Notes under the pieces: model-generated
What the model was told of the DNA's origin: nothing
Seen by the model: the letters and a program-made list of their open reading frames with translations, nothing else
The model's database searches: none
Part shown: one piece after another, positions 1,797-60,249 of the stretch
Numbering within the stretch: the first letter of the stretch is position 1
Layout of the letters: every line of letters begins with the position of its first letter
Translations under genes and position numbers: made by a program
Sequence record: PQ330092.1
Length of the DNA: 64,000 nucleotides
Direction: 5' to 3' (one strand)

Positions 1797-4700
1797 TTAC
1801 TTAACTAATAATATATTTTTAATATCATTACCACTAACTTGTAGACTATCAGTGTATACTGAAAGATCTATAGTGTAACTATTTTGTGTGTAACGTTTTA
1901 ACATATCATAATTACCTAAATTAATTCCATTGAAAGAATATGTAGTATTAAGTTTAAAATCATGTTCTGCACTATACATTACACCACGGAGTAAATTATT
2001 TGCATTTCTAACTTCAACTTTTTCATATCCAATCGATATAATATCATTCATGTTTGCGGCTGAACCGGATAAAACATTATTTCTAATACTATAAGGACTT
2101 ATTGATTTAGGTTGAGAAACATAGGTTGTATTTTCTTCACTAATGGTTGTGATGTTAGTAACAGTACCACCAACAACACCGATATACATACCGTCAACCA
2201 TTGGGAATCCATAAACCCATATCCCTTCATTATTTCTAAACGGTTGAATAACACTTGAATCATATTCGATAACGTTGATTTCTAAACTATCAGTCATTTT
2301 AGTTCTTGCCAATTCACTAAGAACTCCCGCACCCGTAATTGGTAAGTTATAACCGTTATCGATAGTAATTCCATCAACATCAAATATTTCATTAGAGATT
2401 ATCCAAACGTCAACGTCATCTGGTGTTATTCCGTCATTGTACTTACCACCATTTAAAGTAGTATCGTAGAAAACATCATAATTAATTACATCAATGGTGT
2501 AATTTCTATTTTGTTCATACAATTTAATACCATTCTTGACAAATTCAGGGTCAGCAAATGTTCTAACACGAACAATGTTCAATGCTAGAGGCTGTACTGG
2601 CTCATTTTGTTGTGCAAGAGTGATGTTATCATAACGGAGAACTGCACCAGTACTCTCATCAATCAATTCAATCGTTTCCTTACCTGTATTTCTTACAGTG
2701 AATAGGATCGGAGTTGTATTGTTTTTGATGTTAGATACACGCAAGATTGTTTCCCATGTGTGATTTTGATATCTCACAAAATCTTCACCATCAGGAGTGA
2801 AAATCATCACCTTATCACCATCAGATAGGTCATTGTCAACTATTTCTGCTTCAGTTAAGCTATTAATAGATCTCACACGATAGAAATATTTTTCATCAAA
2901 CTTCGATGTTGTTTTATTAATATCATTTTCAATCTTAGCATATGAAGGAATACTTACAATTGCTTCTGTATGTTTATATGGATTGATAATTGCCATACCT
3001 TCAGTTTGATATCTGCTGTTATCACGTAATTGTACAAGAGATACATTGTCAAACCCATATCCATCAACTGTAAATCTAATTTGACCTACATCACGCCCAG
3101 AAGGGTTTATGTCAGATATATCCACAATATAAGGATCAACTTCATCATCTTTAACTTCCCATTTTATTGAAGAAGTTTGAGATTCCAATGCTAGGTTATC
3201 AAATGCATTCATATCATTGAAGTACTTAGCTTCAGTAATACTATCAAGTATATATTGATAATCAGAATACATTGGATTATTTTGATCTAGTGGTAAATCA
3301 TCAAGATTTATTTCAGCTAGTTCAACCATTTCACCATTTGTGATAAAATAATCTTCCATGAAATCATCAATACTTTGTTCATCAGGTATACTTTGATATA
3401 CACCGTTAACATTTAAGTAAACATATTTTCGTGGAATCATTGTAATTGCATAGATATCAATTGGGGTCTTACTAAGAATCTCTTCAGCTTTTTCGTACTT
3501 ATCAGTAGCGTCTTTGTCGAATAACCCTCTCATACCTGCTAATACGTGAATAGCATCAGTATAGAAACGGGTATCACCACCTACTTCATCATAACGATAA
3601 ACATATACACCATACTCAACTTCAAGTTTAACTTTTACTTCATAGTCTGATGCGTCAGGATTTTTATCTTTAATTAATGAAATGTATTTTTGATACAATT
3701 CACTGCTTATTTCAAAATATCCATAGTTATAATCATTACTAGAAGAAAAGCCTAATGGAAGTCTAGTACTAGGATTGTCATTATAAGTAAGTCCACTAAA
3801 TCCACATCCAACTTCATCGTGAATTTTCTCATCACTTATATCTTTATAAAGTTTCAAACGGTTTGCCAATGTGTTATACTGAACATATTGTCTAAGGTCA
3901 GTAAACATATCGTTATGCGTTGATTCTTTATAAACACGTTCCAATGTAGCAGTGAATTCATCAGTTGCTTCTAAATCTTCCGCATGGTCTTTATACCACT
4001 GGTTAACGCCATATGCTGTTCCTAGTGTTACATCCAATTCTGGATAGTAGATTTGCATTTGATAAGCAATAAGAAGATCGAAAGTTTCTTCACTATATTC
4101 TGGGAAAGAATATATATAACGTTGTAATTCATAGTTACTAACAGCATCCTTTTCATTGGATTGATATTTGTTATTAACACTTACTAATTCATTTATGCTT
4201 GCCAAATCTTCATTTGGTTTACACTGAATATTATCATAATGCATAATAATATCAATTTCTTGGAATCTTCTATTTGGTGTAACGAAATCACTTGGTAGTG
4301 AACCTACCTGTTCCCATTTTTGGGTAATTTCATTAAATTGAGCGTACTCATAATCCCAAATATCTTTTTCAGTTTTGATCCAAGAACCATCAACGAAAAT
4401 ATATCCATTAGGATCTAAATCATTACATAGACCTTTTATTAAATCATCATCAGATGTCTTTTGCTCTATTTGTGAACGAATTTTAGTTCTATAAGGTTTA
4501 ACTTCTTCAAAATATTCAACAATTTGATTAATCAAATTATCGTTTGAATAGTTTTGAACTAATGATTGTTCCAAACCAACAATATAGATATATGATGTTT
4601 TAAATACCCAATCCACAACACTTTGTTCAACATGTACATATTTGACCATATCAAAAACAATTTCGCTTTGATGTAAATCGAAAGAATTTTTGAGTAAAGC

Positions 4701-7700
4701 TAGTGCTTTACGAACGTTGATTTCACGATTGCTTAGTGAACCATTATCATTATGAACACTATAATCTGCGTAAAGCATATCATTGAGTTCAACTGTACTG
4801 TTTTCACGACCAATCGCTTTCCAATAAATTGAATCGCGTGATTGTGATTTAATATACAATGTCCAAATGTTTTCACTATCGGTAACTCTGATAATATCGC
4901 CAACTTGGTAGTTTTTAGTATTAGCATCTTCTAAGCTTGACTCTTGAGTATAAGTCGTGTTACTATCATATCCAACATCATACCAATCAGCATATGACCA
5001 GTACTGAGTCATGTCTAATGAGGTTCCTAGTGATTCAACATAATCAGATTGTTTAATCATTTTATGTTGTCCCTCACCTTTGTTTTCTAACGTTATAGTA
5101 ACAACACTACCCGCGTTTGCTGGACTATTCATTAACTGAATATATCCATTTTCGTCGAAGTGAATAAAATAAACAGCACTAGAAGTTAATGGATTTGGTA
5201 GATATCCACTAGTACTTAAAATAACAGCGTCATTTTCTTTAAATTTATCACTTTCAACTGCAATAACTAATTCATTATTGTAAGACAACACACGGAAAGA
5301 AACTTCATTAGGGTTAACTTCAGTGGTTTTAACATTAAACACATCTTCCATAACAACACTATTAGTGGTTATGTTTTGTGATCTATAATAATTATTAGCA
5401 CTTTCTACAAAGTTTCTACGAGCTTCTATAACATTTTGGAACCAAGTTTTGTTTGATCCTAAACCGTTATCAACATCTGGATATAATAAATTAATCACAG
5501 AACCTGATTCAGTAGTTTCTTGTCCAATTAAAGAATTCCACATTGAATCCCAAATTAGAGGGTTAAAGTTATAACTATCACCTTCCTTGCATAGTTGGTA
5601 CTGATCATGTTTAACAACTTCAGTATTATCCATGTAATAAGAAATTGTCAAAATACTAGTATCATCATTAACTTTAAACTGCATATTACTAAGAATAAAC
5701 GAGTTTTCATTGATTGGTGCAAACCAAGGAATGTTTAACTGTGATGGATCTTTAATAATACGAGCAATATCAGTACATGATTTTGTTCTGGTATGTAGTG
5801 GTGGTACATAAATGGTATCACGTACCCAGAAGTAGTATTTTGTAACATAAGTATCAGTTGAGCTATCATATTCCAAAAATGTACTATAGTTATCTTCAAG
5901 AGCGGTTCCGCTTGGTAGATACATAGTATTATTTTTGTTTTTCTTAGCAACGTCTTTACAATACTTATCCCAATTATATGGCTCTACTGGAGAACAAACC
6001 CATTCCAACACATCAATGGTACTATGTGGTAATAAACGACCCCAGTTATAACGTTTGTATTCATTAGTTGCATCAATATCAACGTTTCCGTCTGCATCAT
6101 AAATTGCACGTGTATAATCCAAATAAAATGCAGTACTTGTATTCCACCATACTTGACCAACTTTATCAGCACCCCAAGCCTGAATTAATTCACCATTGCT
6201 ATTATATTGTGCTGGGTCTATTGGTGACGTATAAGTTACGTTTTGCATTGCTGCACCAGGAATAACCCCATTGATAGGGTCATACACATTTAGATATAAT
6301 GCAGTAATGTTAGTACGTTCATCATATGTAGTTGGACGGTCAAAAAAAGTACTTTGTGGTGCTTTGTAACTATACTTTTTGTCAATATATGCTTGACGCT
6401 CTTCTGCACTGGCAAAACGTGATACATAACGATACAAACGTGGACGTGTATCTGGATCAGTAAATTCAATATCAATAGAAGTGTCAAATGGAACTACCAT
6501 AACTTTAGGATCAGAACCAGCAGTATAATATTGACTTTCTACTGTTAAAGTATCTGGCATAAAGTTAGTTTCATCAACAAAATAATAATAATCACCATCT
6601 TCAAGTGGTACATTATCAGTTAAAGTTACTTTACAAAATTGTTCAGCATACACATCGGTATTTTCAATAGGTGTTATAGAAACCATTTGTACATTAGTAT
6701 CAACTAATTCAAAAATATTCCATAAACCATTTCCGTCTTTAAACATCCAAACAGATTCAGGGTTTTCACCTTTACCATTAGTGTAAGTTATACGGTCATT
6801 ATATGCAGTACTGAAATCTTTTGTAGTGTAAGATACTTCATCCAATGTTACTGGACCAATATCTGGAAGTTGAATGTTTTCACTTCTTCCACTACGCATC
6901 GGGAATGAGAACTTACCATTTGGACGTGTAATCCAACGAGGATCTTTACCTTGTTCGCCGAAGTATACAATATTGTTTCCATTTCCATTTGAAGTAGCGT
7001 TTACATCAAAAGATACCATTTGTGGTTGTTGTTTAAATTGGTCATTGATTAGTTTAAATTGAAGGTTTTTCTTACCATCAATATTACCATATGTACCAAT
7101 TTTAAATGCCCATTCTTGTAATGCTTTATATTCATCAGTGTCATATGATTTAGAAACACGAAGTACACGTTCTAAAACTTGGTTAGTACCTTTATCGTGA
7201 ATGAATCCTTTATAGAAATCAACACGACTAACATCACTACTAATCATACGCTGTAGATAATCACGAGATTGATAACCAATCAAATGGTTTGACAACTCTT
7301 GTAATTGTACATCACTTACTGGAGTTTCACTATCATAATAATGTTGGAAATCCGACACTAATTTTTCAAATGATGGTAGTGTTCCAGCTTCCAAGATAAT
7401 AAATCCAGGAGCTTGTAGGCGACCAGTCCATGAACCAGTAATATATCCATACATTTTAATTAGTTCTTGAATAGAACCATATGTTGGCTGATAAATGTAA
7501 TCACCAAAAATAGTTTTATCATCAAAAATAACAGCATGTTCATATGAACACAAACTTAAACGAATCAATGCAATGCGTTTATTAGATTCTAAAGTTCTAA
7601 CAGTGAAGATATTTCCAATACGAGAAGTTTCAATTTCATATTGGCGAATACCTTGGTTATTATCATCAAGTAATGACCATACACCACCATTATTTTGCGT

Positions 7701-10700
7701 AATAGATTGTACTGAACCAAAGTCTGCCCCAAATTTAGCGTTTGCAGCACTTGGGGTACAAGAAATAAATTCACCAGTTACTAGAGAATTCTGACTCCAG
7801 ATCACGAAATCTTTAGCAATAGTGTTCCAATCTTGTTGAGCACCACTATCATTTACATCTTCAAAAATCCAACCATGTTCTTTAAGATATTCACCATATC
7901 CACAAATAAAAGTATAAACTTCTTGGTAACTATTGAAAACTTTACCATATTCAATTGAAGCTTCAGACTTCCATTCATTATAATGAACAACATTACGGTT
8001 TTCCAATTTAAGAGTTACTTTTCTACCATTTTTTACGGGAAGTTTATATTTAAATTTAGCACCAACTAGATCATATCCATCAATCTGATATGCACTACCA
8101 TTCCAAGTAATTTTGATCGCACTCATTTGCTCATCACGGATATTATTAGAACGAACAAGACCAATGGTTTGGTTTTCTTGTGAAATAAGACCGAAAGATT
8201 TAGCATTGAATGTTAGCTGATCTGCTTTAGTAAATCCTCCAATTTTATGACCAACATTTATATAAGAAGAACGAACTACATCCCCATACTTGGTGGTAAT
8301 ATTTTTATTTTGATACATCAAATGGTCACTTACAAACATTTGATAACCAATGGTTCTTGTGCTATTTTCACCATGAACTACTGTATTTTTATCAAAATTA
8401 ATACGCTTACGTGTATCACCATAAAGGAATTGTGAACCATCAGTGAATACTTCTTTTAAGTTATCATTGCGGGTATCCCAGAAATAGTTAGCAAATTGTG
8501 CTGGTTTAGCTTTATACAAAAGCATCATTTGGTCATATGCAAACAATGTAGTGTTCATGTATGTAAATTCCATGTCACCCATATCACCATATGTCCAAGG
8601 TTCTGCTCTATGATTTAAAGATCCAGACACTAAACCTAAAATTTCAGGTGCAATATATTCAACCGCACAAATATCAATACCAGAAGATGTTTTATTTCCA
8701 GTTTTTGTAATTTTGAATGGCTGTACACCAAATCTTTTATATTTGTCATATTGACCACGACGATCACCAAATAAAATAGTTCCAGTACTGCTATCGCCAA
8801 TAGTTCCGTCAATATCCCAAAGACCACTAGGAACTAAATCACCTTGCTCATTCATAACAAGTGCTTCATATACATATACAACATCACTATCACGTTCACC
8901 AACTTGAACAGCCGTTGGTTCGTATTCTTGGTTCCACCAAGTTGGACGTTGTGTAAAGCCAAACATTTCCCACGGATGGGTAGCTGGGCGATATGTACCA
9001 TATTGGTCAGTGTAAATGGCACGCCATGAACCACGTGCAGGAATTTCAGTACTTTGACCATTAACTACATAATAAGTGCCAGTATAGTTCCAAGTTCTCC
9101 AATTGTTAGGATCATAATCATGTGTACTATTACTGATACCATTAGTTGCGGTGAAGTTAATGTATCCACGTAGTAATAATGTTTGTTTCTCTTCAGCACT
9201 ATATTCAGTTTTAGTGAAATATGGTGTAGGGAAAAGGTCATCACTATTCAATACTGGTACGTAATCAACATCTTTGAATTTATTATCAATACTATTAAAA
9301 ATTCTATTTTCTAATTCATATACAACATCATCCATTTTATCAACACCATTGATAACACGGTATGCTTTGGAAATAATACCAGTATGACTGATGTTATAAC
9401 AGCTTGGTTTACTACCAGCAGTGAGGAATGTCGCTTTTTCTGGTACATATGCTTGAAGAATACCTAAGAACTGTGGTGTTGGTGGTATAAATGCACGAAT
9501 GAATCCAGAAGTACTTCCAACATTATCATAATAGAATGGGAATGAACTATCACGTCCCATATTAATAGTAGTTAAAATTGCATCAACAATGTTTGCAGCA
9601 CTATTTTGTAAAAAGTCTGATGGATTTTCATCATACATACGAAGCATTTGTGTATTAAATTTATTAATGAATCTAAAATATTCAGATTGCATAAACATAG
9701 TTGCTTCAAACAAATCAATATCTTCATTTGCAGTATGTGCCATCAATGGAAGCATAGATGCTTCATTTTGGATAATTTTAGTACCTACGCCATTATTAAC
9801 CAATCCTTTAGCCAAACGTTCTTCATAGTCATTGAAATCATCAGAAGAACCACGTGTAATGTTCTTTTGAATAATATCCTGAAAATGTAAAGTGTAGTCA
9901 CCTTGGTTAATGTATATAATATTAGAATTATATGGGTTATTTTGTAGGTTGATTGGAACTTCATATGCACCTAATTCTTTATTAGGAGTTACAGTACTGC
10001 TATAAGTTCTAATTTGAATAACAGAATCTTCATCCAATTCTACAGTACTATCTAGAGTGATGCTTTGTACTTGACCTTTTGAAACATTTTTGGTATATTT
10101 GGACACATCAACACCATCAACCACAACTTCAATAATATCAGAATCATTATCTAAAACTTTTTGTGCCAATTCGAATGTATGGTCATATTTTACAATCTGA
10201 ACACCATCACCAGTAATTGGATGCCAATCTAGATAAGTTTCACGGTCAGCTTTATAGTACTGATATGTTCTATCAACTTCAATAACATATGCATACATAC
10301 CATCAACTGGTTCTTTAAAAACTTCCATATCATAAACAGTACTGAATACACGATACATATCAGTACGTTGGACTTGTGGAGTTTGTTTTACAAATTGTTT
10401 AGAGTACTCTTCTGAACGAACCCAATCGGTTTGAAGATTCATTTCATTATTTTCATCAATAATGTTATAATAGTATAAACCATCAATTTCAACTTCTTTT
10501 CCAAGATGGTCATAGGTATAACGTTGGGATTGTAAAAAGTTTTCATAAATGTAATAATTATAATCACCAAGTTCAATGTTATATCCATATACACTATCAG
10601 TTGCATAGTTGTAATTTATTTTAAAACCAAACAACTCTGAACCTTTAAAGTTACTTGATGGATATGTAGTACTGTTGTCAAGTTTGATACCATTACGATC

Positions 10701-11768
10701 ATAAAGTTGGAATTTAGGGAATACGTTAACACTAGTTTTTGATTGTGCACGAACCCACAAAGAACCATTCCAGTACATAGAACTATTACCATACTCATTA
10801 CCTTTAGTGATTAGAACAACATCACCATCTTGAGGTTCACCACTTGGGCGTGATTCGGTTTCTTCTTCTGGATCTAGTGCTAAACCATAAACACGAGTAC
10901 CATCTTGCATTTTTTTCACATATACATTATAAATTCTATTGTTTTCACCATTGTTACCAATACTGGTGAATAGAATACGCATTCCATCTTGCGGAATAAT
11001 ACCATCAATACGTATACCACTATTAATATCTTTTTGAACGATATCTTCAGGTTTAATAATATCAGAGAACAGATCAACAGTTCCACGGAATTTTGTACCG
11101 TAGTTAATTAGCTCAATATTTTTATTATATTCAATAATTGGTGCACGTGCACGAATAAAACGTGAATCTTGCATTAATTCTTCAGTTAATATTGAGCCAT
11201 CTTCTAATGTTTCACCTAAAGTATACCAAAAGTTTTGTAGTGACCATGTATTACCATTAAGTGCTCCACGTTCCATTACAATGTAATCAGGTGAAGTAAT
11301 ATTATAAGAGTTTTTAGTATCCCAAAGATATGAGCTAAAATTGTTCATTTTATTTGGGTTAATAGCTGGAGTCCATGCATAAAACTTACCGTTGAACAAA
11401 CGGCTTTCATTATCGGTTAGTGCTCCATAATGATTCATGTATCCAACTAGATCATCATAAAATTGAATTGAACGAATTGTCGAATCATCATTTTTTGAGA
11501 CGTAAGCAGTGGACAACTGATAAAGTTGACGTGCTACAGTACTTTCATGTAAGAAGATATTACCAGCAGCGGCAGGAGAACCCATATCACCAATATAGCC
11601 GTCAACTAATTCGTTTTCAGCCGGATTAAACCATTGTTGAATAACATCATCACTGACTTTTTGAATATCTTCTAAGCCTTGCATCCACTCAGGCAATCTT
11701 TTAATAAAAAGCTTCTTCTGTACTGCTTCAGCCATCTGTGTAGGTTGAAACTTAAAATTATTAGTCAT
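1797..11768 (-). CDS. Giant virion structural protein (3323 aa), probable baseplate wedge component (gp7 position)
   Basis: Uninterrupted ORF directly after gp6; own late promoter; GGAG 7 nt before ATG at 11768 (track start 11798 lacks an RBS); function inferred from synteny only. Confidence 0.6.
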   Translation of the reverse strand: MTNNFKFQPTQMAEAVQKKLFIKRLPEWMQGLEDIQKVSDDVIQQWFNPAENELVDGYIGDMGSPAAAGNIFLHESTVARQLYQLSTAYVSKNDDSTIRSIQFYDDLVGYMNHYGALTDNESRLFNGKFYAWTPAINPNKMNNFSSYLWDTKNSYNITSPDYIVMERGALNGNTWSLQNFWYTLGETLEDGSILTEELMQDSRFIRARAPIIEYNKNIELINYGTKFRGTVDLFSDIIKPEDIVQKDINSGIRIDGIIPQDGMRILFTSIGNNGENNRIYNVYVKKMQDGTRVYGLALDPEEETESRPSGEPQDGDVVLITKGNEYGNSSMYWNGSLWVRAQSKTSVNVFPKFQLYDRNGIKLDNSTTYPSSNFKGSELFGFKINYNYATDSVYGYNIELGDYNYYIYENFLQSQRYTYDHLGKEVEIDGLYYYNIIDENNEMNLQTDWVRSEEYSKQFVKQTPQVQRTDMYRVFSTVYDMEVFKEPVDGMYAYVIEVDRTYQYYKADRETYLDWHPITGDGVQIVKYDHTFELAQKVLDNDSDIIEVVVDGVDVSKYTKNVSKGQVQSITLDSTVELDEDSVIQIRTYSSTVTPNKELGAYEVPINLQNNPYNSNIIYINQGDYTLHFQDIIQKNITRGSSDDFNDYEERLAKGLVNNGVGTKIIQNEASMLPLMAHTANEDIDLFEATMFMQSEYFRFINKFNTQMLRMYDENPSDFLQNSAANIVDAILTTINMGRDSSFPFYYDNVGSTSGFIRAFIPPTPQFLGILQAYVPEKATFLTAGSKPSCYNISHTGIISKAYRVINGVDKMDDVVYELENRIFNSIDNKFKDVDYVPVLNSDDLFPTPYFTKTEYSAEEKQTLLLRGYINFTATNGISNSTHDYDPNNWRTWNYTGTYYVVNGQSTEIPARGSWRAIYTDQYGTYRPATHPWEMFGFTQRPTWWNQEYEPTAVQVGERDSDVVYVYEALVMNEQGDLVPSGLWDIDGTIGDSSTGTILFGDRRGQYDKYKRFGVQPFKITKTGNKTSSGIDICAVEYIAPEILGLVSGSLNHRAEPWTYGDMGDMEFTYMNTTLFAYDQMMLLYKAKPAQFANYFWDTRNDNLKEVFTDGSQFLYGDTRKRINFDKNTVVHGENSTRTIGYQMFVSDHLMYQNKNITTKYGDVVRSSYINVGHKIGGFTKADQLTFNAKSFGLISQENQTIGLVRSNNIRDEQMSAIKITWNGSAYQIDGYDLVGAKFKYKLPVKNGRKVTLKLENRNVVHYNEWKSEASIEYGKVFNSYQEVYTFICGYGEYLKEHGWIFEDVNDSGAQQDWNTIAKDFVIWSQNSLVTGEFISCTPSAANAKFGADFGSVQSITQNNGGVWSLLDDNNQGIRQYEIETSRIGNIFTVRTLESNKRIALIRLSLCSYEHAVIFDDKTIFGDYIYQPTYGSIQELIKMYGYITGSWTGRLQAPGFIILEAGTLPSFEKLVSDFQHYYDSETPVSDVQLQELSNHLIGYQSRDYLQRMISSDVSRVDFYKGFIHDKGTNQVLERVLRVSKSYDTDEYKALQEWAFKIGTYGNIDGKKNLQFKLINDQFKQQPQMVSFDVNATSNGNGNNIVYFGEQGKDPRWITRPNGKFSFPMRSGRSENIQLPDIGPVTLDEVSYTTKDFSTAYNDRITYTNGKGENPESVWMFKDGNGLWNIFELVDTNVQMVSITPIENTDVYAEQFCKVTLTDNVPLEDGDYYYFVDETNFMPDTLTVESQYYTAGSDPKVMVVPFDTSIDIEFTDPDTRPRLYRYVSRFASAEERQAYIDKKYSYKAPQSTFFDRPTTYDERTNITALYLNVYDPINGVIPGAAMQNVTYTSPIDPAQYNSNGELIQAWGADKVGQVWWNTSTAFYLDYTRAIYDADGNVDIDATNEYKRYNWGRLLPHSTIDVLEWVCSPVEPYNWDKYCKDVAKKNKNNTMYLPSGTALEDNYSTFLEYDSSTDTYVTKYYFWVRDTIYVPPLHTRTKSCTDIARIIKDPSQLNIPWFAPINENSFILSNMQFKVNDDTSILTISYYMDNTEVVKHDQYQLCKEGDSYNFNPLIWDSMWNSLIGQETTESGSVINLLYPDVDNGLGSNKTWFQNVIEARRNFVESANNYYRSQNITTNSVVMEDVFNVKTTEVNPNEVSFRVLSYNNELVIAVESDKFKENDAVILSTSGYLPNPLTSSAVYFIHFDENGYIQLMNSPANAGSVVTITLENKGEGQHKMIKQSDYVESLGTSLDMTQYWSYADWYDVGYDSNTTYTQESSLEDANTKNYQVGDIIRVTDSENIWTLYIKSQSRDSIYWKAIGRENSTVELNDMLYADYSVHNDNGSLSNREINVRKALALLKNSFDLHQSEIVFDMVKYVHVEQSVVDWVFKTSYIYIVGLEQSLVQNYSNDNLINQIVEYFEEVKPYRTKIRSQIEQKTSDDDLIKGLCNDLDPNGYIFVDGSWIKTEKDIWDYEYAQFNEITQKWEQVGSLPSDFVTPNRRFQEIDIIMHYDNIQCKPNEDLASINELVSVNNKYQSNEKDAVSNYELQRYIYSFPEYSEETFDLLIAYQMQIYYPELDVTLGTAYGVNQWYKDHAEDLEATDEFTATLERVYKESTHNDMFTDLRQYVQYNTLANRLKLYKDISDEKIHDEVGCGFSGLTYNDNPSTRLPLGFSSSNDYNYGYFEISSELYQKYISLIKDKNPDASDYEVKVKLEVEYGVYVYRYDEVGGDTRFYTDAIHVLAGMRGLFDKDATDKYEKAEEILSKTPIDIYAITMIPRKYVYLNVNGVYQSIPDEQSIDDFMEDYFITNGEMVELAEINLDDLPLDQNNPMYSDYQYILDSITEAKYFNDMNAFDNLALESQTSSIKWEVKDDEVDPYIVDISDINPSGRDVGQIRFTVDGYGFDNVSLVQLRDNSRYQTEGMAIINPYKHTEAIVSIPSYAKIENDINKTTSKFDEKYFYRVRSINSLTEAEIVDNDLSDGDKVMIFTPDGEDFVRYQNHTWETILRVSNIKNNTTPILFTVRNTGKETIELIDESTGAVLRYDNITLAQQNEPVQPLALNIVRVRTFADPEFVKNGIKLYEQNRNYTIDVINYDVFYDTTLNGGKYNDGITPDDVDVWIISNEIFDVDGITIDNGYNLPITGAGVLSELARTKMTDSLEINVIEYDSSVIQPFRNNEGIWVYGFPMVDGMYIGVVGGTVTNITTISEENTTYVSQPKSISPYSIRNNVLSGSAANMNDIISIGYEKVEVRNANNLLRGVMYSAEHDFKLNTTYSFNGINLGNYDMLKRYTQNSYTIDLSVYTDSLQVSGNDIKNILLVK

Positions 11769-11804
11769 TTTTGGACTCCATATAATTCGTTCATTCATTT
11801 GATT

Positions 11805-23198: not shown

Positions 23199-24038
23199 AT
23201 GACAAATAGACCAAAGCGTAAAAAGTATCTCAATAATGCTGATTTACTTCGTGAAATACAAAAAAGTAAAATTTCATATTGCTGGTTATTAGACAAATCA
23301 TATAGTATGTATGATTATATTGTTTTTCATGAGTCAGAAATTACTGCTGAGTTACTAGAAAAAGCTAAGGCAGCACGAATTAAACGACTGAACAATGAAA
23401 TGCTTGATAGTATTCGTGAAAAGGAAAATATGAGTGCTAAAAAAGCTAAAGAATATGCAGATGAACACAATTTAGTTATCACTGACGTTCCAATTGATGA
23501 AGTTGTTATTCGTGTTATTACAGATGAACATATTCCACCAGATACTAGAGTTAACTTTGAACCATTCAAGCATTATATTGTAGATAATGAAGGTATTCTC
23601 TATGAAGTTTGTCGTTCTCACTGGAAAGGCGACCTTGAAACTGGTGAATTCAGTACTGTTCATGGTAAAATTACAAATGAACTTGGGAAGATGTTCATTA
23701 AACTTGCAGAGGAAATCTCACACAAATCTAATTACAGAAACTATACATACTTAGATGAAATGATGGGTGATGCAAGAATACAATTAGTTAAAAACGCACT
23801 TCTCTTTAAAGAGAGCATTCTTTATAAAAAAGATAAACCAGCAGTTCAGCTAAATCCTTTCTCTTACTATACATCATTCGTAAACAATAGTTTTCGTTCT
23901 ATATTGAATAGTGAGAAAAATGTTCGAAATATACGTGATGATTTACTTGAAATGCATGGCTTTACGCCATCACATACACGTCAAATTGAAATTGAATTGA
24001 ACATGATTGAAAGGAAAAATGAAGATGGCTCTGTTTGA
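23199..24038 (+). CDS. gp55: Late-transcription sigma factor, gp55-like
   Basis: YLNNADLLREI...TNELGKMFIKLAE..S..SNYRNYTY.DEM.GDA...NPFSYYT; directly upstream of gp47/gp46. Confidence 0.8.
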   Translation: MTNRPKRKKYLNNADLLREIQKSKISYCWLLDKSYSMYDYIVFHESEITAELLEKAKAARIKRLNNEMLDSIREKENMSAKKAKEYADEHNLVITDVPIDEVVIRVITDEHIPPDTRVNFEPFKHYIVDNEGILYEVCRSHWKGDLETGEFSTVHGKITNELGKMFIKLAEEISHKSNYRNYTYLDEMMGDARIQLVKNALLFKESILYKKDKPAVQLNPFSYYTSFVNNSFRSILNSEKNVRNIRDDLLEMHGFTPSHTRQIEIELNMIERKNEDGSV

Positions 24039-27247: not shown

Positions 27248-27722
27248 TATCAACCATATTTAATTTACCGTCCTTAATCAGCTTTCTAGCTTGCTTTACA
27301 CGAGCAGTAGTGTTACTACCAGGGACAACTCCTAACCCTTCCAGAATCGCGTTTTGCTGTGTTGCTGGAAGCCTTTTAAACTTATTAACATCCACAGTTA
27401 GTGCAGTGTGATGTATAACTTGTTCATCGTCAGGAATGCTGTTATTACGCTCTAAGTAATCAGCAAGATTTCTGAGTACCTCATATAATGGTTTATCAGT
27501 TAAGTGCTTCATATATCGATTGAAGCTGTTTTGTACCTTTCCTTCCCAAGCATTGACTTCATTTTGAAGAACTTGTCTACAATGTTGGTTACCATAGTGG
27601 TAGTGATCCAGTACTGGTTTAGTTATTGGTTCTTTAATTATAGGATCTATTCCATTTTGTTTCTTTAGCAATTCGTTTCGATAGTTTGCAGCATCCTTAC
27701 TATCTTTTAATCTTTTTTTCAT
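27231..27722 (-). CDS. gp49: Recombination/packaging endonuclease VII-like
   Basis: QNG.....LDH.H.......L....NA.EG....F.R...L.NL..YL...IH pattern matches T4 Endo VII, but Zn cysteines are absent. Confidence 0.7.
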   Translation of the reverse strand: MKKRLKDSKDAANYRNELLKKQNGIDPIIKEPITKPVLDHYHYGNQHCRQVLQNEVNAWEGKVQNSFNRYMKHLTDKPLYEVLRNLADYLERNNSIPDDEQVIHHTALTVDVNKFKRLPATQQNAILEGLGVVPGSNTTARVKQARKLIKDGKLNMVDIKKGS

Positions 27723-27752
27723 AATTCCTCACCAAACTATTTGTTATCAAAA

Positions 27753-27760
27753 TATTTATA
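27753..27760 (-). promoter_or_regulatory. Late promoter for Endo VII
   Basis: Perfect TATAAATA. Confidence 0.7.
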
Positions 27761-27813
27761 GATTAGTTATTTGCAATATTTTAAGTACTTAATGAATATT
27801 TTTATAAAAATAG

Positions 27814-27842
27814 TGAGACAACTTTAAAGTTTGTGCTATAAT
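27814..27842 (+). promoter_or_regulatory. Putative middle-class promoter driving an ORF-free region
   Basis: TGAGACA-N16-TATAAT with extended -10 TG. Confidence 0.75.
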
Positions 27843-27848
27843 GTTTGT

Positions 27849-28347
27849 TGTAGTAATGACAATCCTGTTGAATGCAGAAATGCATATAAATTAGAACCTG
27901 ATCCTATCGAAAATGTAGATGGCAGATGAGCAGTTCAACAGTGCGATGAGCAAAAGAAACCCGTTAGATGTGGGCATAGTTTGAACCCCTCACGGCAATG
28001 CGGCTCAATAAAGAACTCCGATAAGCATACAGAGAGTTCCTAGATAGACATATAAGGATCGCACCTTACCAGATTTGCTAAGGGAGTTTATTAAGTGATT
28101 TTAATAAACAGCCTGAAGTTTGATTGTATAGACTTTCAGGTGAGTGTCAGGATGATTAAGACTGACGACCGTTGCACATGACTGCGATAGAGAGAAACAG
28201 AGCAACCCGCTTTCGTTCTTAATATATTTTTAAGAAATTCGCAATACAATAAATGCTGAAACCATCAGCGTCAAGAAATAGAGACTTCATTGTCTCTTTT
28301 TTATTGTCTTCATTCCCCTGCGGGGGGATGAAAATGTCCTCAACAAA
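27849..28347 (+). ncRNA. Candidate large structured non-coding RNA, family not recognised
   Basis: Own promoter, no ORF over about 25 codons seen on the sense strand, at least 10 stems including a GAAA tetraloop and G-U pairs valid only on the + strand, terminator-like hairpin at 28280-28302. Confidence 0.6.
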
Positions 28348-28400
28348 TCCCGTCAAGTATTAAATCTTTTAAAGTTCTTTATAATTTAATTTAATTAAAT

Positions 28401-28460
28401 GAATATGAGTTACGTAGTAACGAATATTCTTCAGCTAACGAATGAAATGAGTTAGATGAA
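28401..28460 (+). other. Two tandem hairpins with GNA triloops and tandem G.A pairs in an AT-rich tract (candidate origin element)
   Basis: 28401-28429 GAATAT-GA-GTTAC-GTA-GTAAC-GA-ATATTC; 28430-28460 TTCA-G-CTAAC-GA-AT-GAA-AT-GA-GTTAG-A-TGAA. Confidence 0.55.
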
Positions 28461-28522
28461 TCCAATAATATTAAAATTAATCCTTTCATAATTCAATTCA
28501 AATAATTCTGTAGTTTAAAACC

Positions 28523-28551
28523 AAAAAAAAAAACCAGCAACAATGTGCTGG
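28523..28551 (-). terminator. Terminator of the gp26/gp51 operon
   Basis: Minus strand CCAGCA-CATTGT-TGCTGG followed by T11. Confidence 0.8.
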
Positions 28552-28562
28552 CTATATGAAAA

Positions 28563-28772
28563 TTAGTGCTTCTCGTTTTGTTTTTTAATTTTTTTATTAA
28601 AAGACTTAACTAATAAGTCTCTATCTATTAATGGCATATTAAGGAGTGTTCCATAGTCAATGTTATCCATATATACAGAACATTCCATTAGTGCATTTTT
28701 GATTTCTGACTTATTCAGTTCTATCTCCTTCAGTACTTCTTGTATTTCTTCAGGAGATGACTGGAGAAGCAT
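28563..28772 (-). CDS. Small tail/baseplate assembly chaperone (gp51 C-terminal or 'T'-like segment)
   Basis: TAATG overlap with gp26-like gene; IDYGTLLNMPLIDRD resembles the short second segment of tail assembly chaperones. Confidence 0.5.
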   Translation of the reverse strand: MLLQSSPEEIQEVLKEIELNKSEIKNALMECSVYMDNIDYGTLLNMPLIDRDLLVKSFNKKIKKQNEKH

Positions 28773-29608
28773 TACTCGAAAAAATGACTAGGATCATATT
28801 TTAGTCCATCAATTTCCCATTGATGATTACATCCATCACATTCTACTTCCATACTATGAGATACACCAATTTCAAGTACTTCATCCATTTTTTCACGAAT
28901 TAGTTTAAGTACTCCCTTCGATTGTTGTCCAAGCCATTCATTAATAAATTCTTTTTCAACTACTTCATCACCATCTGGTGTTATAATTTTTGCAATAACT
29001 CCACCAATCATATCGAAGTTAAGTTGAGCCATGTTTTCAAATACTTCAGAAAATATTTTTACTTTTTCATCTTTATCAATATCAGCAGTTTCAAGAAACT
29101 TAGTCTTCTGCTGCTCACTGAACATGCGTTCAGCAAACGATGAATATTCTTTCCATGTCAGTGGTCTAAATTCTAAACGTAGTCCATTATCTAAATCAAT
29201 TGATGGGATTTCTTCAAATGCTTGTGCAGTTTCAAGAAGATATGATAGATTACGTTCAAATCGACCTTCTTTTTCACATTCAGGACATACAACGTTAATA
29301 TCATATGTTTCTTCTTTAGAAGCAACTTTAATAGCAATAAGAAGCATTTCAACGTCATTTACATACAACTCATCAGCGTCAATTACATTAGGAACACAGT
29401 TTTCAATAACACGGGATACTGCATCTCCGTTTAGTAACATATCGGGGGTATTAAGTGTCATTTCATCACGTGCACTACGTGCACAAACTCCACATTTGAC
29501 ACCTTTTGGACCTAGAACTCCTTCTTTATAAGGAATAACGCCGTTTGTAACTAACTTAGTACTGATCTCTTCAATTTTAGTGTACTTAGCAAGTGGATTC
29601 ATAGCCAT
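28772..29608 (-). CDS. gp26: Baseplate hub assembly chaperone, gp26-like
   Basis: NPLAKY...SARDEMTLNTPDMLLNG...CVPN...DVEMLLIAI...CPEC and CDGC; divergent from the tape measure gene. Confidence 0.7.
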   Translation of the reverse strand: MAMNPLAKYTKIEEISTKLVTNGVIPYKEGVLGPKGVKCGVCARSARDEMTLNTPDMLLNGDAVSRVIENCVPNVIDADELYVNDVEMLLIAIKVASKEETYDINVVCPECEKEGRFERNLSYLLETAQAFEEIPSIDLDNGLRLEFRPLTWKEYSSFAERMFSEQQKTKFLETADIDKDEKVKIFSEVFENMAQLNFDMIGGVIAKIITPDGDEVVEKEFINEWLGQQSKGVLKLIREKMDEVLEIGVSHSMEVECDGCNHQWEIDGLKYDPSHFFE

Positions 29609-38081: not shown

Positions 38082-38110
38082 AGGGACTCTTCGGAGTCCC
38101 TTTTCTTTTT
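38082..38110 (+). terminator. Terminator after major capsid gene
   Basis: AGGGACTC-TTCG-GAGTCCCT plus TTTCTTTTT. Confidence 0.92.
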
Positions 38111-45818: not shown

Positions 45819-46107
45819 TATATATAAGCGTATTGGTGAAGTATTAGAAGGTAATGGTATCATTAATTCTGTACTAGCATATGATAATGATGAAGAAGTA
45901 GTTCTAATTGGTGCGGGTTTTACTCGCACTGGTTCAGTGGAAGTTGACGGAGAGATTGCTGATGTTTACACTCTTGTGAAAAAGCGTAAAGTTGTTTTTG
46001 TCGATGATGTACATACATTAAAAGACTTGAAAAAATTACGCGATAAAATTGGCATGAGTTCTACAATTGATAAGCCTTATCTTCAACGTTGGAATACAAA
46101 ATACTGA
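45811..46107 (+). CDS. Hypothetical protein
   Basis: 98 aa, coupled to upstream ORF. Confidence 0.65.
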   Translation: MSNIYKRIGEVLEGNGIINSVLAYDNDEEVVLIGAGFTRTGSVEVDGEIADVYTLVKKRKVVFVDDVHTLKDLKKLRDKIGMSSTIDKPYLQRWNTKY

Positions 46108-46115
46108 TAAAAAAT

Positions 46116-46144
46116 TGAGACAAGCATCATTTTTGAGATATAAT
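46116..46144 (+). promoter_or_regulatory. Putative middle-class promoter (sliding clamp)
   Basis: TGAGACA-N16-TATAAT. Confidence 0.75.
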
Positions 46145-46208
46145 GGTGCTTGTAGTAATCTTACATAAAAACATTTTTTGATTAACAAATAAAACGGAGA
46201 ATTATATA

Positions 46209-49634: not shown

Positions 49635-49704
49635 CAAAAAATATCACTAGCATTTAAATTTACTGAGATATTTAATGAATTTCTATGATATTATTTATCA
49701 AATC

Positions 49705-49733
49705 TGGGAAAGTGATTCAAGATGTGCTATAAT
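49705..49733 (+). promoter_or_regulatory. Putative middle-class promoter (RNase H)
   Basis: TGGGAAA-N16-TATAAT with extended -10 TG. Confidence 0.7.
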
Positions 49734-49742
49734 TATCAATGA

Positions 49743-55000
<5,258 letters not shown>

Positions 55001-55010
55001 TTAAAAAATA

Positions 55011-55039
55011 TGGGACAGTATAAAAACCTGTGCTATAAT
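55011..55039 (+). promoter_or_regulatory. Putative middle-class promoter (ssb-uvsX-uvsY)
   Basis: TGGGACA-N16-TATAAT with extended -10 TG. Confidence 0.75.
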
Positions 55040-55126
55040 GTAAAACGTTGAAGGAACAATGAAGTTTCTGAAACATTGAAGCCAATTAACAAATAACAAA
55101 GAAACCCAAAATCAAGGAAGATATAT

Positions 55127-60194: not shown

Positions 60195-60215
60195 ACCCGC
60201 TGTTTGTGATATAAT
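60187..60215 (+). promoter_or_regulatory. Putative middle-class promoter overlapping a terminator-like hairpin (60183-60205)
   Basis: CGGGATA-N16-TATAAT with extended -10 TG; weakest match of the set. Confidence 0.55.
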
Positions 60216-60249
60216 GTGTCATATGACAACAACAAGGATGTAAAATAAA

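What the first reader, a model, noticed from the sequence alone, without database searches (positions are those of the whole stretch)
28361..28520. Tandem strand-specific DNA-type hairpins (GNA triloop plus sheared G.A pairs) in an AT-rich tract: candidate replication origin
Seen: hairpin 1 (28401-28429) is GAATAT-[GA]-GTTAC-(GTA)-GTAAC-[GA]-ATATTC. Hairpin 2 (28430-28460) is TTCA-g-CTAAC-[GA]-AT-(GAA)-AT-[GA]-GTTAG-a-TGAA. Both have a GNA triloop and a 5'-GA/5'-GA tandem mismatch, and reuse two 8-mers in swapped order (ATGAGTTA 28405/28447; TAACGAAT 28418/28436). Established: GNA triloops and tandem sheared G.A pairs stabilise ssDNA hairpins on one strand only, and T4 origins are a middle promoter plus an AT-rich unwinding element forming an R-loop. 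Inference: a + sense transcript from 27849 would displace the + strand, the one on which these hairpins are stable, giving a promoter-RNA-DUE-hairpin origin.
Basis: partly seen in the sequence, partly recalled or inferred. Interest (0 to 1): 0.72.

Follow-up and report, generated by a model that had tools for sequence, protein, structure and literature searches.

The report
Conserved tandem hairpins ending a repeated phage RNA module
The two hairpins are real and conserved, but they are not a unique origin-like site: they are the last part of a previously undescribed non-coding module (promoter, ~450-nt structured RNA, terminator, tandem hairpins) present 4-5 times per genome in Rak2/121Q-like jumbo phages, usually just before a gene start.

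Summary
The window is the last 64 kb of Escherichia phage JP4 (Asteriusvirus, 121Q/Rak2-like jumbo phage).

**What they belong to.** They are the conserved pair H-A/H-B that ends a multicopy module:
- a TGnTATAAT early promoter;
- a ~450-520-nt RNA with strong covariation;
- an intrinsic terminator;
- a G-rich hairpin;
- an invariant CCTCAACAAATCYCGTCA(A)G block;
- a short AT-rich spacer;
- H-A, then H-B.

In most copies an SD and ATG of a + strand gene follow within 10-40 nt. At this locus no gene follows.

**What relatives show.** Stems vary with compensatory changes.

**The origin reading.**
- The T4-type origin criteria that could be tested are not met. The promoter is not MotA-type. The AT tract lies 510 nt from the start site, beyond a terminator.
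- The site is not unique.
- GC skew in the window turns elsewhere.

**Verdict.** The hairpins are most likely cis-acting RNA stem-loops of read-through or leader transcripts (about 0.5). A ColE1-like role as primer RNA plus ssDNA hairpins is not excluded (about 0.2). The DNA-type loops are the main argument for it.

The parts
27813..27842 (+). Early sigma-70-type promoter (GAGACA, 16-18 nt spacer, TGCTATAAT) driving the module. Predicted start site is about 27849.
   Evidence: scores it 10/12 with a TG extension. One search finds the same promoter family at five or more other places in the window. One search finds a TGnTATAAT 470-540 nt upstream of the G-rich hairpin in 23 of 24 module copies that have enough upstream sequence.
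27849..28279 (+). ORF-free, GC-richer structured RNA body of the module.
   Evidence: Only ORFs under 40 aa are present. GC is 0.37-0.43 against about 0.25 in the flanks. RNAalifold over 15 copies predicts 73 pairs, 35 of them with compensatory double changes. There is no Rfam match.
28280..28305 (+). Intrinsic terminator: AGAGAC-TTCATT-GTCTCT followed by a T-run.
   Evidence: Detected. The stem covaries among copies (AGAGAC/GTCTCT, AGATCC/GGGTCT, GTACAC/GTGTAC) and is always followed by T6-7. It is missing in copies L055 and L064.
28309..28332 (+). G-rich hairpin: TTCATTCCCC-TGCG-GGGGGATGAA, containing a U.G pair.
   Evidence: It is nearly invariant in all copies. Pairs at alignment columns 601-626 hold, including UG in 14 of 15 sequences.
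28338..28357 (+). Invariant block CCTCAACAAATCCCGTCAAG, followed by a TATAAT-like hexamer (TATTAA, 28358-28363).
   Evidence: Pairwise identity is 0.98 within the genus and 0.95 when Munch and EJP2 are included. The block is present in all copies.
28358..28400 (.).
   Evidence: Sequence. Its length varies from 23 to 50 nt, and its sequence also varies between copies.
28401..28429 (+). Hairpin 1, called H-A here: outer stem GAATAT/ATATTC, a GA/GA tandem, stem GTTAC/GTAAC, and a GTA triloop closed by C-G.
   Evidence: Sequence and fold. It is homologous to GAATT-GA-[variable stem]-GA-A-AATTC in about 20 distinct copies.
28430..28460 (+). Hairpin 2, called H-B here: TTCA/TGAA, a G.A mismatch, CTAAC/GTTAG, a GA/GA tandem, AT/AT, and a GAA triloop.
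   Evidence: Sequence and fold. It occupies the position of TTTGAC-AWTC-GNA-GAWT-GGCAAA in the other copies. L052 carries the same CTAAC/GTTAG stem.
28461..28521 (.). Poorly conserved AT-rich filler.
   Evidence: Pairwise identity is 0.67 within the genus, with large indels in A4.
28522..28553 (-). Intrinsic terminator of the convergent baseplate-hub and 69-aa genes: AGCCAGCA-CATTGT-TGCTGGTT followed by T11.
   Evidence: Detected and conserved in all relatives. The G17 and UE-S1 records annotate it as a terminator.

Best explanation
The two hairpins are the conserved tandem stem-loop domain (H-A followed directly by H-B) that ends a multicopy non-coding module of Rak2/121Q-like jumbo phages.

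**The module.** An early promoter at 27813-27842 starts a + sense RNA at about 27849. A ~450-nt structured RNA follows. Most transcripts probably stop at the intrinsic terminator at 28280-28305.

**Read-through.** Transcripts that read through carry the G-rich hairpin, the invariant CCUCAACAAAUCCCGUCAAG block, an AU-rich spacer and then H-A/H-B. Transcripts of the two copies that lack the terminator carry the same elements.

**Proposed action.** On that RNA the two abutting hairpins fold. Tandem G.A pairs and G..A-closed loops stiffen them. They would act in cis at the junction between the structured RNA and whatever follows.
- In most copies an SD/AUG follows 10-40 nt downstream. There the hairpins would insulate folding, stabilise or define the end of the mRNA, or set ribosome access.
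- At this locus the downstream gene is absent. Here the hairpins would be the 3' domain of the long isoform of a stand-alone non-coding RNA that runs into the convergent terminator at 28532-28553.

**Shown:** the anatomy, strand asymmetry, covariation, copy number and position relative to genes.

**Inferred:** that the hairpins are transcribed, that they act as RNA, and what they do.
For: **1. Identity of the window.** It is identical to Escherichia phage JP4 330-370 kb. 36 related phage records cover the region, and each holds 4-5 places matching it.

**2. Constant architecture.**
- Every copy recovered from IMG/VR and GenBank has the same order of parts, all on one strand.
- H-A was found only inside the module in about 690 kb of held sequence.
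- H-B had the G-rich hairpin upstream in 24 of 27 contexts. One clear exception stands alone between two + strand genes.

**3. Hairpin signature rather than duplex operator.**
- The interior of H-A ranges from 11 to 36 nt with unrelated sequence but always self-pairs.
- All 15 diverse copies fold as two abutting hairpins, z -1.9 to -7.5.
- Compensatory events:
  - A4 has GTTAAC/GTTAAC by a paired insertion.
  - L042 has GTCA/TGAC where others have GTTA/TAAC.
  - The window lineage turns the unpaired A of GA-A-AATTC into an A-T pair.
  - H-B varies as CATTC/GAATG, CAATC/GATTG, CATAC/GTATG and CTAAC/GTTAG, and as TTTG/CAAA or TTAG/CTAA.
  - L052 replaces the outer GA/GA with Watson-Crick UGAG/CUCA.

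**4. Strand.**
- All 25 H-A copies are more stable on the + strand than on the reverse complement, by about 3 kcal/mol on average.
- Mismatches are purine.purine on the + strand.

**5. Transcribed context.**
- The promoter lies upstream on the same strand.
- In most paralogs too little room is left between H-B and the ATG for a separate promoter (15-38 nt).
- In L052 the H-B loop and 3' arm supply the SD (GGAG). In L014 the AUG lies inside H-B.
- L055 and L064 lack the terminator altogether.

**6. Upstream partner.** The upstream element is clearly a structured RNA, with 35 of 73 pairs compensatory.

**7. Selection at this gene-less locus.** Identity is 0.96-0.97 in the hairpins against 0.67 in the flank.
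Against: - **No transcript data.** None exist for any of these phages.
- **Terminator in the way.** An intrinsic terminator lies between the promoter and the hairpins in 13 of 15 aligned copies, so only read-through RNA would carry them.
- **DNA-type loops.**
  - The loops fit the DNA mini-hairpin rule (C-GNA-G, C-GNNA-G) better than the RNA rule. Examples are GAA, GTA, GGA, GCA, GATA, GTCA, GTTA and GTAA, and GCGAAGC itself in L073/L074. Only GTAA is a GNRA loop.
  - A review reports r(GCGAAAGC) melting at 39 C, far below the DNA mini-hairpin; d(GCGAAGC), the GAA-triloop form, melts at 76 C (PMC13037366).
  - Among 17 terminator-like RNA hairpins of this window none has a GNA triloop, and two have UUCG.
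- **Conserved without a gene.** The pair is kept at a locus with no downstream gene. A purely translational role therefore cannot be the whole story.
- **No binding partner or precise RNA function is identified.**
Confidence: 0.5

Rival explanations
1. Single-stranded DNA signal of a transcription-primed origin. This is the reader's idea, generalised to the whole module and closer to ColE1 than to T4.

The structured RNA would form a persistent hybrid near the G-run and AT-rich spacer and prime rightward DNA synthesis. The displaced + strand would then fold into H-A/H-B. These nuclease-resistant, SSB-excluding mini-hairpins would mark where the primase/helicase assembles.
For: - The loops are of the DNA mini-hairpin type (C-GNA-G or C-GNNA-G, including GCGAAGC and GCGTAGC) and lie on the strand that would be displaced.
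- Such motifs occur at G4-type primase origins, at RSF1010 ssiA and at N4 promoters (PMC13037366).
- The pair is conserved at this locus although no gene follows.
- Several copies per 350-kb genome would suit multiple origins.
- A G-run plus an AT-rich stretch downstream of a long structured RNA recalls ColE1 RNA II. This comparison is from my own knowledge and was not tested.
- The phage encodes a DnaB-like helicase, a primase and RNase H.
Against: - A terminator precedes the AT tract.
- The AT spacer is only 17-50 nt long and varies.
- The promoter is not MotA-type.
- One hairpin pair stands alone between two genes, with no promoter or structured RNA.
- The SD or AUG is built into H-B in two copies.
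- The GC-skew minimum of the window is at 22-23 kb and follows gene orientation.
- There is no experimental origin mapping in this phage group.
Confidence: 0.2
2. Vestigial leader. The hairpins once preceded a gene that has been lost at this locus. They now have no function here.
For: No + strand ORF of 60 aa or more follows within 420 nt, either in the window or in any orthologous locus. Most paralogous copies do precede a gene.
Against: - The loss is old: it is shared by Asteriusvirus, Munch, EJP2 and several IMG/VR genomes.
- The hairpins nevertheless stay at 0.96-0.97 identity while the adjacent flank has fallen to 0.67.
- The changes that do occur keep the pairing, as in A4, JNE01 and ph0011.
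Confidence: 0.1
3. Double-stranded DNA operator. The four copies of TAAC-NN-AT in alternating orientation would be palindromic binding sites for a dimeric DNA-binding regulator of early transcription, possibly through cruciform extrusion.
For: The reused 8-mers ATGAGTTA and TAACGAAT form two imperfect palindromes. The outer sequences GAATTGAG, CGAAAATTC and TTTGAC are strongly conserved.
Against: - The palindrome interiors differ freely in sequence and length (11-36 nt) and keep only self-complementarity.
- The breaks in symmetry are always purine.purine on the + strand.
- The + strand fold is favoured in all 25 copies.
- No adjacent regulator gene is conserved with the module.
Confidence: 0.05
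4. N4-type DNA-hairpin promoter, read by a virion RNA polymerase.
For: N4 early promoters are short hairpins with purine-rich 3-nt loops of the mini-hairpin type (PMC13037366). The window encodes a 3333-aa virion protein.
Against: - The 3333-aa protein matches only a 'virion structural protein' PHROG and no Pfam polymerase domain.
- In N4 the purine-rich loop is on the template strand (from my own knowledge). Here that would drive transcription leftward, antisense to the module and away from the genes that follow the hairpins.
Confidence: 0.02
5. A small ORF (18 aa on the + strand at 28399-28455, or 32 aa on the - strand at 28391-28489, annotated in JP4) or an intrinsic terminator.
For: Both ORFs exist mechanically.
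Against: - JNE01 has +1 nt and A4 has +2 nt inside H1, which shifts both frames. EJP2 and Munch are unalignable as protein.
- There is no SD.
- No T-run follows either hairpin on either strand.
Confidence: 0.01

Closest known systems
ColE1-type origin: RNA II primer plus a downstream primosome-assembly hairpin on the displaced strand (from my own knowledge)
   Same: Both have a promoter, then a long structured RNA of about 0.5 kb, a G-run, an A/T-rich stretch, and then hairpins that are stable on the strand of the same sense as the RNA.
   Different: - Here an intrinsic terminator precedes the G-run.
- The module is present 4-5 times, inside early operons, and usually abuts a start codon.
- No RNase H site, hybrid or initiation has been shown.
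- There is no sequence similarity.
T4 oriF(uvsY)/oriG(34) R-loop origins (from my own knowledge)
   Same: The phage has a T4-like replication and recombination gene set. A transcript could in principle form an R-loop in AT-rich DNA.
   Different: - T4 origins use a MotA-dependent middle promoter with the unwinding element directly downstream.
- Here the promoter is an early sigma-70 type, the AT tract is about 510 nt away behind a terminator, and the conserved parts are hairpins rather than merely AT-rich DNA.
DNA mini-hairpins GCGNAGC/GCGNNAGC at ssDNA initiation sites: G4, St-1 and alpha3 oric, RSF1010 ssiA, N4 promoters (PMC13037366)
   Same: Both have C-GNA-G or C-GNNA-G loops with a sheared G.A pair. 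Exact GCGAAGC (L073, L074) and GCGTAGC (L055) occur in paralogous copies.
   Different: - Those sites act in genomes or intermediates known to be single-stranded. Here single-strandedness is hypothetical.
- The stems are AU-rich.
- The window's H2 loop is closed by T-A.
- One copy has UUC, one UUCA and one AAA in place of GNA.
HK022 put RNAs and other tandem-hairpin leader elements (from my own knowledge)
   Same: Both have two directly abutting, irregular stem-loops in an untranslated leader downstream of an early promoter, acting (if at all) in cis on the same transcript.
   Different: There is no sequence similarity. The put elements lie upstream of the terminators they suppress. No antitermination has been tested here.
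Large structured phage-associated ncRNAs (GOLLD, ROOL and similar) and the RNA-seq-defined lncRNAs of jumbo phage PA5oct (PMC7318152)
   Same: A several-hundred-nucleotide, promoter-driven, ORF-free structured RNA in a jumbo phage, of unknown function.
   Different: - No Rfam model matches.
- No similarity to the four PA5oct lncRNAs was found by profile search or conserved motifs.
- This module is multicopy and is coupled to the tandem hairpins.

Membership tests
T4-type R-loop origin (oriF/oriG) | MotA-dependent middle promoter (MotA box near -30 plus a sigma-70 -10) | tested here: not met
   The promoter at 27813-27842 has a -35-like GAGACA and an extended -10 TGCTATAAT. No TGCTT-type box lies near -30. 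It belongs to the window's early promoter family.
T4-type R-loop origin (oriF/oriG) | DNA unwinding element immediately downstream of the promoter | tested here: not met
   The first very AT-rich tract (28358-28400) starts about 510 nt after the start site and lies past the intrinsic terminator at 28280-28305.
T4-type R-loop origin (oriF/oriG) | Persistent R-loop, with replication initiating at the site | not testable with these tools
   This needs DRIP-seq, footprinting, marker frequency or 2D gels. GC skew in the window only follows coding strand, with its minimum at 22-23 kb.
DNA mini-hairpin (GNA/GNNA loop closed by C-G) | G-N-A or G-N-N-A loop closed by a C-G pair | tested here: met
   - H1 is C-GTA-G.
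- Most H-B copies are C-GAA-G, C-GTA-G, C-GGA-G or C-GTAA-G.
- H-A apices are C-GAA-G, C-GCA-G, C-GATA-G, C-GTCA-G or C-GTTA-G.
- Exceptions: the window's H2 and the Munch apex are T-GAA-A, L068 has TTC, L064 has TTCA and L077 has AAA.
DNA mini-hairpin (GNA/GNNA loop closed by C-G) | The structure forms in single-stranded DNA in vivo | not testable with these tools
   Sequence cannot tell RNA from ssDNA. Both fold: -10.1 kcal/mol with DNA parameters and -15.2 with RNA parameters.
Cis-acting RNA leader structure | Lies between a same-strand promoter and a start codon, with covarying stems | tested here: met
   This holds for most paralogous copies. At the window locus the start codon is absent, so the criterion is met for the family and only in part for this copy.
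Cis-acting RNA leader structure | Demonstrated transcript covering the element | not testable with these tools
   No transcriptome of an Asteriusvirus or Rak2-like enterobacterial phage was found in the library.
Intrinsic terminator | GC-rich stem followed by a U-run | tested here: not met
   No T-run follows H1 or H2 on either strand, and the scan does not list them.
Any Rfam family | Score at or above the gathering threshold | tested here: not met
   The 64-kb window gives no hit at gathering thresholds. For 27700-28620, only sub-threshold chance hits to terminator-like sRNAs appear at E up to 10. No tRNA or tmRNA is found.
Protein-coding small ORF | Reading frame conserved in relatives | tested here: not met
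   Indels of +1 nt (JNE01) and +2 nt (A4) inside H1 break both candidate frames.

The most novel reading that the evidence does not exclude
The 4-5 modules are the replication origins of Rak2/121Q-like jumbo phages and work on a ColE1-like principle. A conserved, structured early RNA would prime DNA synthesis near the G-run and AT spacer. The tandem + strand mini-hairpins (GA/GA plus C-GNA-G) would then fold on the displaced strand as the priming or helicase-loading signal. That would be a new origin type for large dsDNA phages, combining an RNA II-like primer with G4/ssiA-like hairpins.
Probability: 0.13. Interest if true: 0.85.

Novelty: new variant of a known kind. Interest (0 to 1): 0.55.

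Why it matters
- **Unrecognised element.** Nothing is known about origins, leaders or non-coding RNAs of the Asteriusvirus/Rak2-like jumbo phages, several of which are being developed for therapy. GenBank records annotate this ~700-nt conserved element as strings of tiny hypothetical proteins.
- **Corrected annotation and a new candidate RNA family.** Recognising the module fixes those annotations and defines a new candidate large structured RNA family for this phage group.
- **A clear experiment.** The tandem hairpins carry loop types that are hallmarks of stable DNA hairpins, yet they sit where an RNA leader element would sit. That makes a clean RNA-versus-ssDNA test possible.
- **Either outcome is informative.** One answer gives a new leader or regulatory device for early genes. 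The other gives the first origin signals for this phage group.

Tried and rejected
- **Rfam.** No family matches at gathering thresholds over the whole window or at E up to 10 over 27700-28620.
- **tRNA/tmRNA.** None found.
- **Small ORFs on either strand.** Rejected because of frame-breaking indels in relatives.
- **Terminator function of H1/H2.** Rejected because no U-run follows them.
- **Other copies of the hairpin motif in the window.** Only chance matches inside genes at 61.3 and 61.8 kb.
- **Homology to the RNA-seq-proven lncRNAs of the related jumbo phage PA5oct.** None found by motif search or nhmmer profile.
- **N4-like virion RNA polymerase as a reader of hairpin promoters.** The 3333-aa ORF is only a 'virion structural protein' PHROG.
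- **GC or AT skew as an origin indicator.** It follows gene orientation and is not informative.
- **Literature on origins, ncRNAs or transcriptomes of these phages.** Nothing found.
- **Motif resemblances checked by eye and rejected.**
  - Hammerhead core (CUGANGA...GAAA): positions 3-6 do not match.
  - K-turn: the internal loop is 2x2 or 2x3, not 5x2.
  - Integron attC, REP and IS200/IS605 hairpins: no transposase or integrase is present, and synteny is conserved.
- **Late-promoter reading of the hexamer after CGTCA(A)G.** The true late genes of the window carry an exact TATAAATA, which most modules lack. Left unresolved.
Full report
**Where the window comes from.**
- BLAST of 27700-28600 against phage genomes gives a 100% match to Escherichia phage JP4 (PQ330092.1, 370,741 bp). 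Window position equals JP4 position minus 306,741.
- Further matches at 82-99.9% are to 121Q, PBECO4, G17, UE-S1, phAPEC6 and other members of the genus Asteriusvirus. Weaker partial matches are to Salmonella phage Munch and to Klebsiella, Erwinia, Yersinia, Cronobacter, Pectobacterium, Serratia and Xanthomonas jumbo phages.
- Each record holds 4-5 places matching the query.
- The genes around the finding are:
  - gp47/gp46-like SbcCD;
  - endonuclease VII, on the - strand, ending at 27722;
  - an 840-nt stretch without credible ORFs;
  - a 69-aa gene and a T4-type baseplate hub gene on the - strand (28563-29608; Pfam T4_baseplate);
  - structural genes on the + strand.

**The observation.**
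- Folded as DNA, the + strand gives -4.1 kcal/mol for H1 (z -2.8), -4.8 for H2 (z -6.0) and -10.1 for the pair (z -4.5). The - strand gives -3.7, -2.8 and -8.1.
- Folded as RNA, the pair gives -15.2 kcal/mol (z -4.0).
- Two things were missed:
  - An intrinsic terminator (28280-28297 plus T-run) lies between the proposed transcript start and the hairpins.
  - The terminator of the convergent - strand genes (28553-28532 plus T11) bounds the region on the right.
- Within the genus, H1 and H2 are 96-97% identical. The right half of the flagged AT-rich tract (28461-28521) is only 67% identical and carries large indels. The tract is therefore two conserved hairpins plus filler.

**What the hairpins belong to.** Exact-motif scans of IMG/VR recovered some thirty copies from about a dozen jumbo-phage genomes of 348-378 kb. 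These included three copies in 121Q itself. All copies share one architecture on one strand:
- a TGnTATAAT extended -10 promoter;
- 450-520 nt without ORFs;
- an intrinsic terminator whose stem covaries (absent in L055 and L064);
- a nearly invariant G-rich hairpin (window 28309-28332);
- the invariant block CCTCAACAAATCYCGTCA(A)G (28338-28357), followed by a TATAAT-like hexamer;
- 17-50 nt of AT-rich spacer;
- a long irregular hairpin, H-A;
- directly abutting it, a second hairpin, H-B.

The ORF-free body is a structured RNA by the usual criterion. RNAalifold on 15 copies predicts 73 pairs, 35 of which show compensatory double changes. It matches no Rfam family.

**Homology of H1 and H2.**
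- The window's H1 is H-A. The consensus is GAATT-GA-[stem-loop]-GA-A-AATTC, and the window has GAATAT-GA-GTTAC-GTA-GTAAC-GA-ATATTC.
- The window's H2 sits in the place of H-B. The consensus is TTTGAC-AWTC-GNA-GAWT-GGCAAA.
- H2 carries at its tip the GA-NN-GAA-NN-GA motif. In Munch, L013, L024 and others that motif caps H-A.

**Evidence that these are single-strand structures on the + strand.**
- The interior of H-A ranges from 11 to 36 nt, with unrelated sequences that always self-pair.
- Fifteen diverse copies all fold as two abutting hairpins, z -1.9 to -7.5.
- Compensatory events:
  - A4 has GTTAAC/GTTAAC through a paired insertion. JNE01 enlarges the loop to GTCA.
  - L042 has GTCA/TGAC where others have GTTA/TAAC.
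  - The window lineage turns the unpaired A of the 2x3 loop into an extra A-T pair.
  - H-B stems vary as CATTC/GAATG, CAATC/GATTG, CATAC/GTATG and CTAAC/GTTAG, and as TTTG/CAAA or TTAG/CTAA.
  - L052 converts the outer GA/GA into Watson-Crick UGAG/CUCA. This shows that the G.A positions behave as pairs within a continuous helix.
- H-B keeps one purine.purine mismatch five pairs below the loop in almost all copies.
- All 25 H-A copies, about 20 distinct sequences, are more stable on the + strand than on the reverse complement.
- These facts rule out a symmetric duplex operator and any coding role.

**RNA or DNA?**

For RNA:
- The element lies downstream of a same-strand promoter and a covarying RNA.
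- In most paralogs the start codon of a + strand gene follows H-B by 15-38 nt, so the mRNA must start upstream of the hairpins.
- The downstream genes include an ADP-ribosylglycohydrolase-like protein and small acidic proteins.
- In L052 the H-B loop and 3' arm provide the SD (GGAG). In L014 the AUG is inside H-B.
- Two copies have no terminator, so the promoter reads straight through.
- One hairpin pair stands alone between two + strand genes without the RNA body.

For DNA:
- The loops obey the DNA mini-hairpin rule. They are C-GNA-G or C-GNNA-G: GAA, GTA, GGA, GCA, GATA, GTCA, GTTA and GTAA, with exact GCGAAGC and GCGTAGC in some copies. Only one of the four tetraloop types is GNRA.
- A 2026 review reports that only GNA loops give such DNA mini-hairpins and that the RNA versions are far less stable. 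It also reports that the motif sits at G4-type primase origins, at RSF1010 ssiA and at N4 promoters (PMC13037366).
- Seventeen terminator-like hairpins of this window, which are RNA signals, use UUCG and other loops and never a GNA triloop.
- The pair is maintained at this locus although no gene follows in any relative.

The positional evidence seems stronger to me, so I rate the RNA reading at about 0.5 and an ssDNA reading at about 0.2.

**The origin hypothesis as stated.**
- The T4 model (from my own knowledge of oriF and oriG) needs a MotA-dependent middle promoter with the unwinding element just downstream.
- Here the promoter belongs to the window's early family, GAGACA/GGGACA-N17-TGnTATAAT.
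- The AT tract begins about 510 nt downstream, beyond a terminator.
- The site is one of 4-5 homologous modules embedded co-directionally in arrays of small early-type genes.
- The cumulative GC-skew minimum of the window lies at 22-23 kb, where gene orientation flips, and skew simply tracks the coding strand.
- A ColE1-like version escapes these objections. It would combine a structured primer RNA, a G-run, an AT stretch and hairpins on the displaced strand. It rests on analogy only.
- No paper in the library reports an origin, a transcriptome or an ncRNA for these phages.
- The related Pseudomonas jumbo phage PA5oct has four RNA-seq-defined lncRNAs (PMC7318152). They show no similarity to this module.

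**Verdict.**
- The hairpins are real, conserved and strand-specific.
- They are best described as the terminal tandem stem-loop domain of an undescribed multicopy promoter-RNA-terminator-hairpin module of Rak2/121Q-like jumbo phages.
- Most likely they act as RNA in read-through or leader transcripts.
- The specific T4-type origin interpretation is not supported, and a primer-RNA/ssDNA-hairpin origin remains a minority possibility.
- Transcript-end mapping and early marker-frequency sequencing on a laboratory host would settle it.

Noticed in passing
window 27849-28305 (promoter at 27813-27842): A ~455-nt ORF-free structured RNA with its own extended -10 promoter and an intrinsic terminator. 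Of 73 predicted pairs, 35 are compensatory across 15 copies. There are 4-5 copies per genome and no Rfam family. The JP4 record annotates four tiny hypothetical CDS (33-45 aa) across this RNA and the hairpins; these are almost certainly spurious.
   Followed up: partly
window 28309-28357: A G-rich hairpin (TTCATTCCCC-TGCG-GGGGGATGAA) is followed 5 nt later by the invariant CCTCAACAAATCCCGTCAAG. The order 'hairpin then CUC..AACAA' weakly recalls the rrn boxB-boxA antitermination signal. That comparison is from memory only and was not tested.
   Followed up: no
window 27925-27928 and 28351-28354; also 28271-28276 and 28352-28357: RNAalifold proposes a long-range helix GAUG/CGUC enclosing almost the whole RNA, including the terminator. 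All four pairs are invariant, so covariation cannot test it. GTCAAG occurs twice (28271-28276 and 28352-28357), once before and once after the terminator plus G-rich hairpin, which would allow alternative pairings.
   Followed up: no
window 28358-28363 and the equivalent position in all copies: The hexamer right after CGTCA(A)G is TATAAT-like in most copies (TATAAT, TATAAA, TACAAT, TATTAA and others), without a good -35. It may be a second promoter feeding the hairpins and downstream genes, or part of the RNA.
   Followed up: partly
window 27805-27844, 46107-46146, 49695-49733, 54927-54966, 55002-55041, 60174-60216: A family of near-identical early promoters, GAGACA/GGGACA-N16-18-TGnTATAAT(G), all on the + strand.
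   Followed up: partly
window about 17064(-), 27753(-), 29643(-), 35601(+): An exact T4-type late promoter motif TATAAATA, sometimes preceded by AGTAC, lies upstream of structural genes and of endonuclease VII. This fits the gp55-like late sigma factor encoded at 23199-24038.
   Followed up: partly
L052, about 520 nt downstream of its module (reverse-strand position 6019): A stand-alone H-A-like/H-B pair lies between two + strand genes, with no RNA body or G-rich hairpin upstream. Its H-B has a G.U where other copies have G-C (GGTAAA for GGCAAA).
   Followed up: partly
L014 (121Q second copy) and L052: In L014 the start codon of the downstream 142-aa gene lies inside the 3' side of H-B, with the C-GAA-G mini-hairpin between a purine-rich SD-like run and the AUG. 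In L052 the H-B loop has become GGA, so that GGAG serves as the SD 8 nt before the AUG.
   Followed up: partly
window 38082-38101 (+) and near 11.8 kb (-): Intrinsic terminators with C(UUCG)G tetraloops, as in T4. Among 17 terminator-like hairpins in the window, none has a GNA triloop.
   Followed up: yes
window 1797-11798 (-): A 3333-aa ORF matches only PHROG 10938 ('virion structural protein') end to end and has no Pfam domain.
   Followed up: partly
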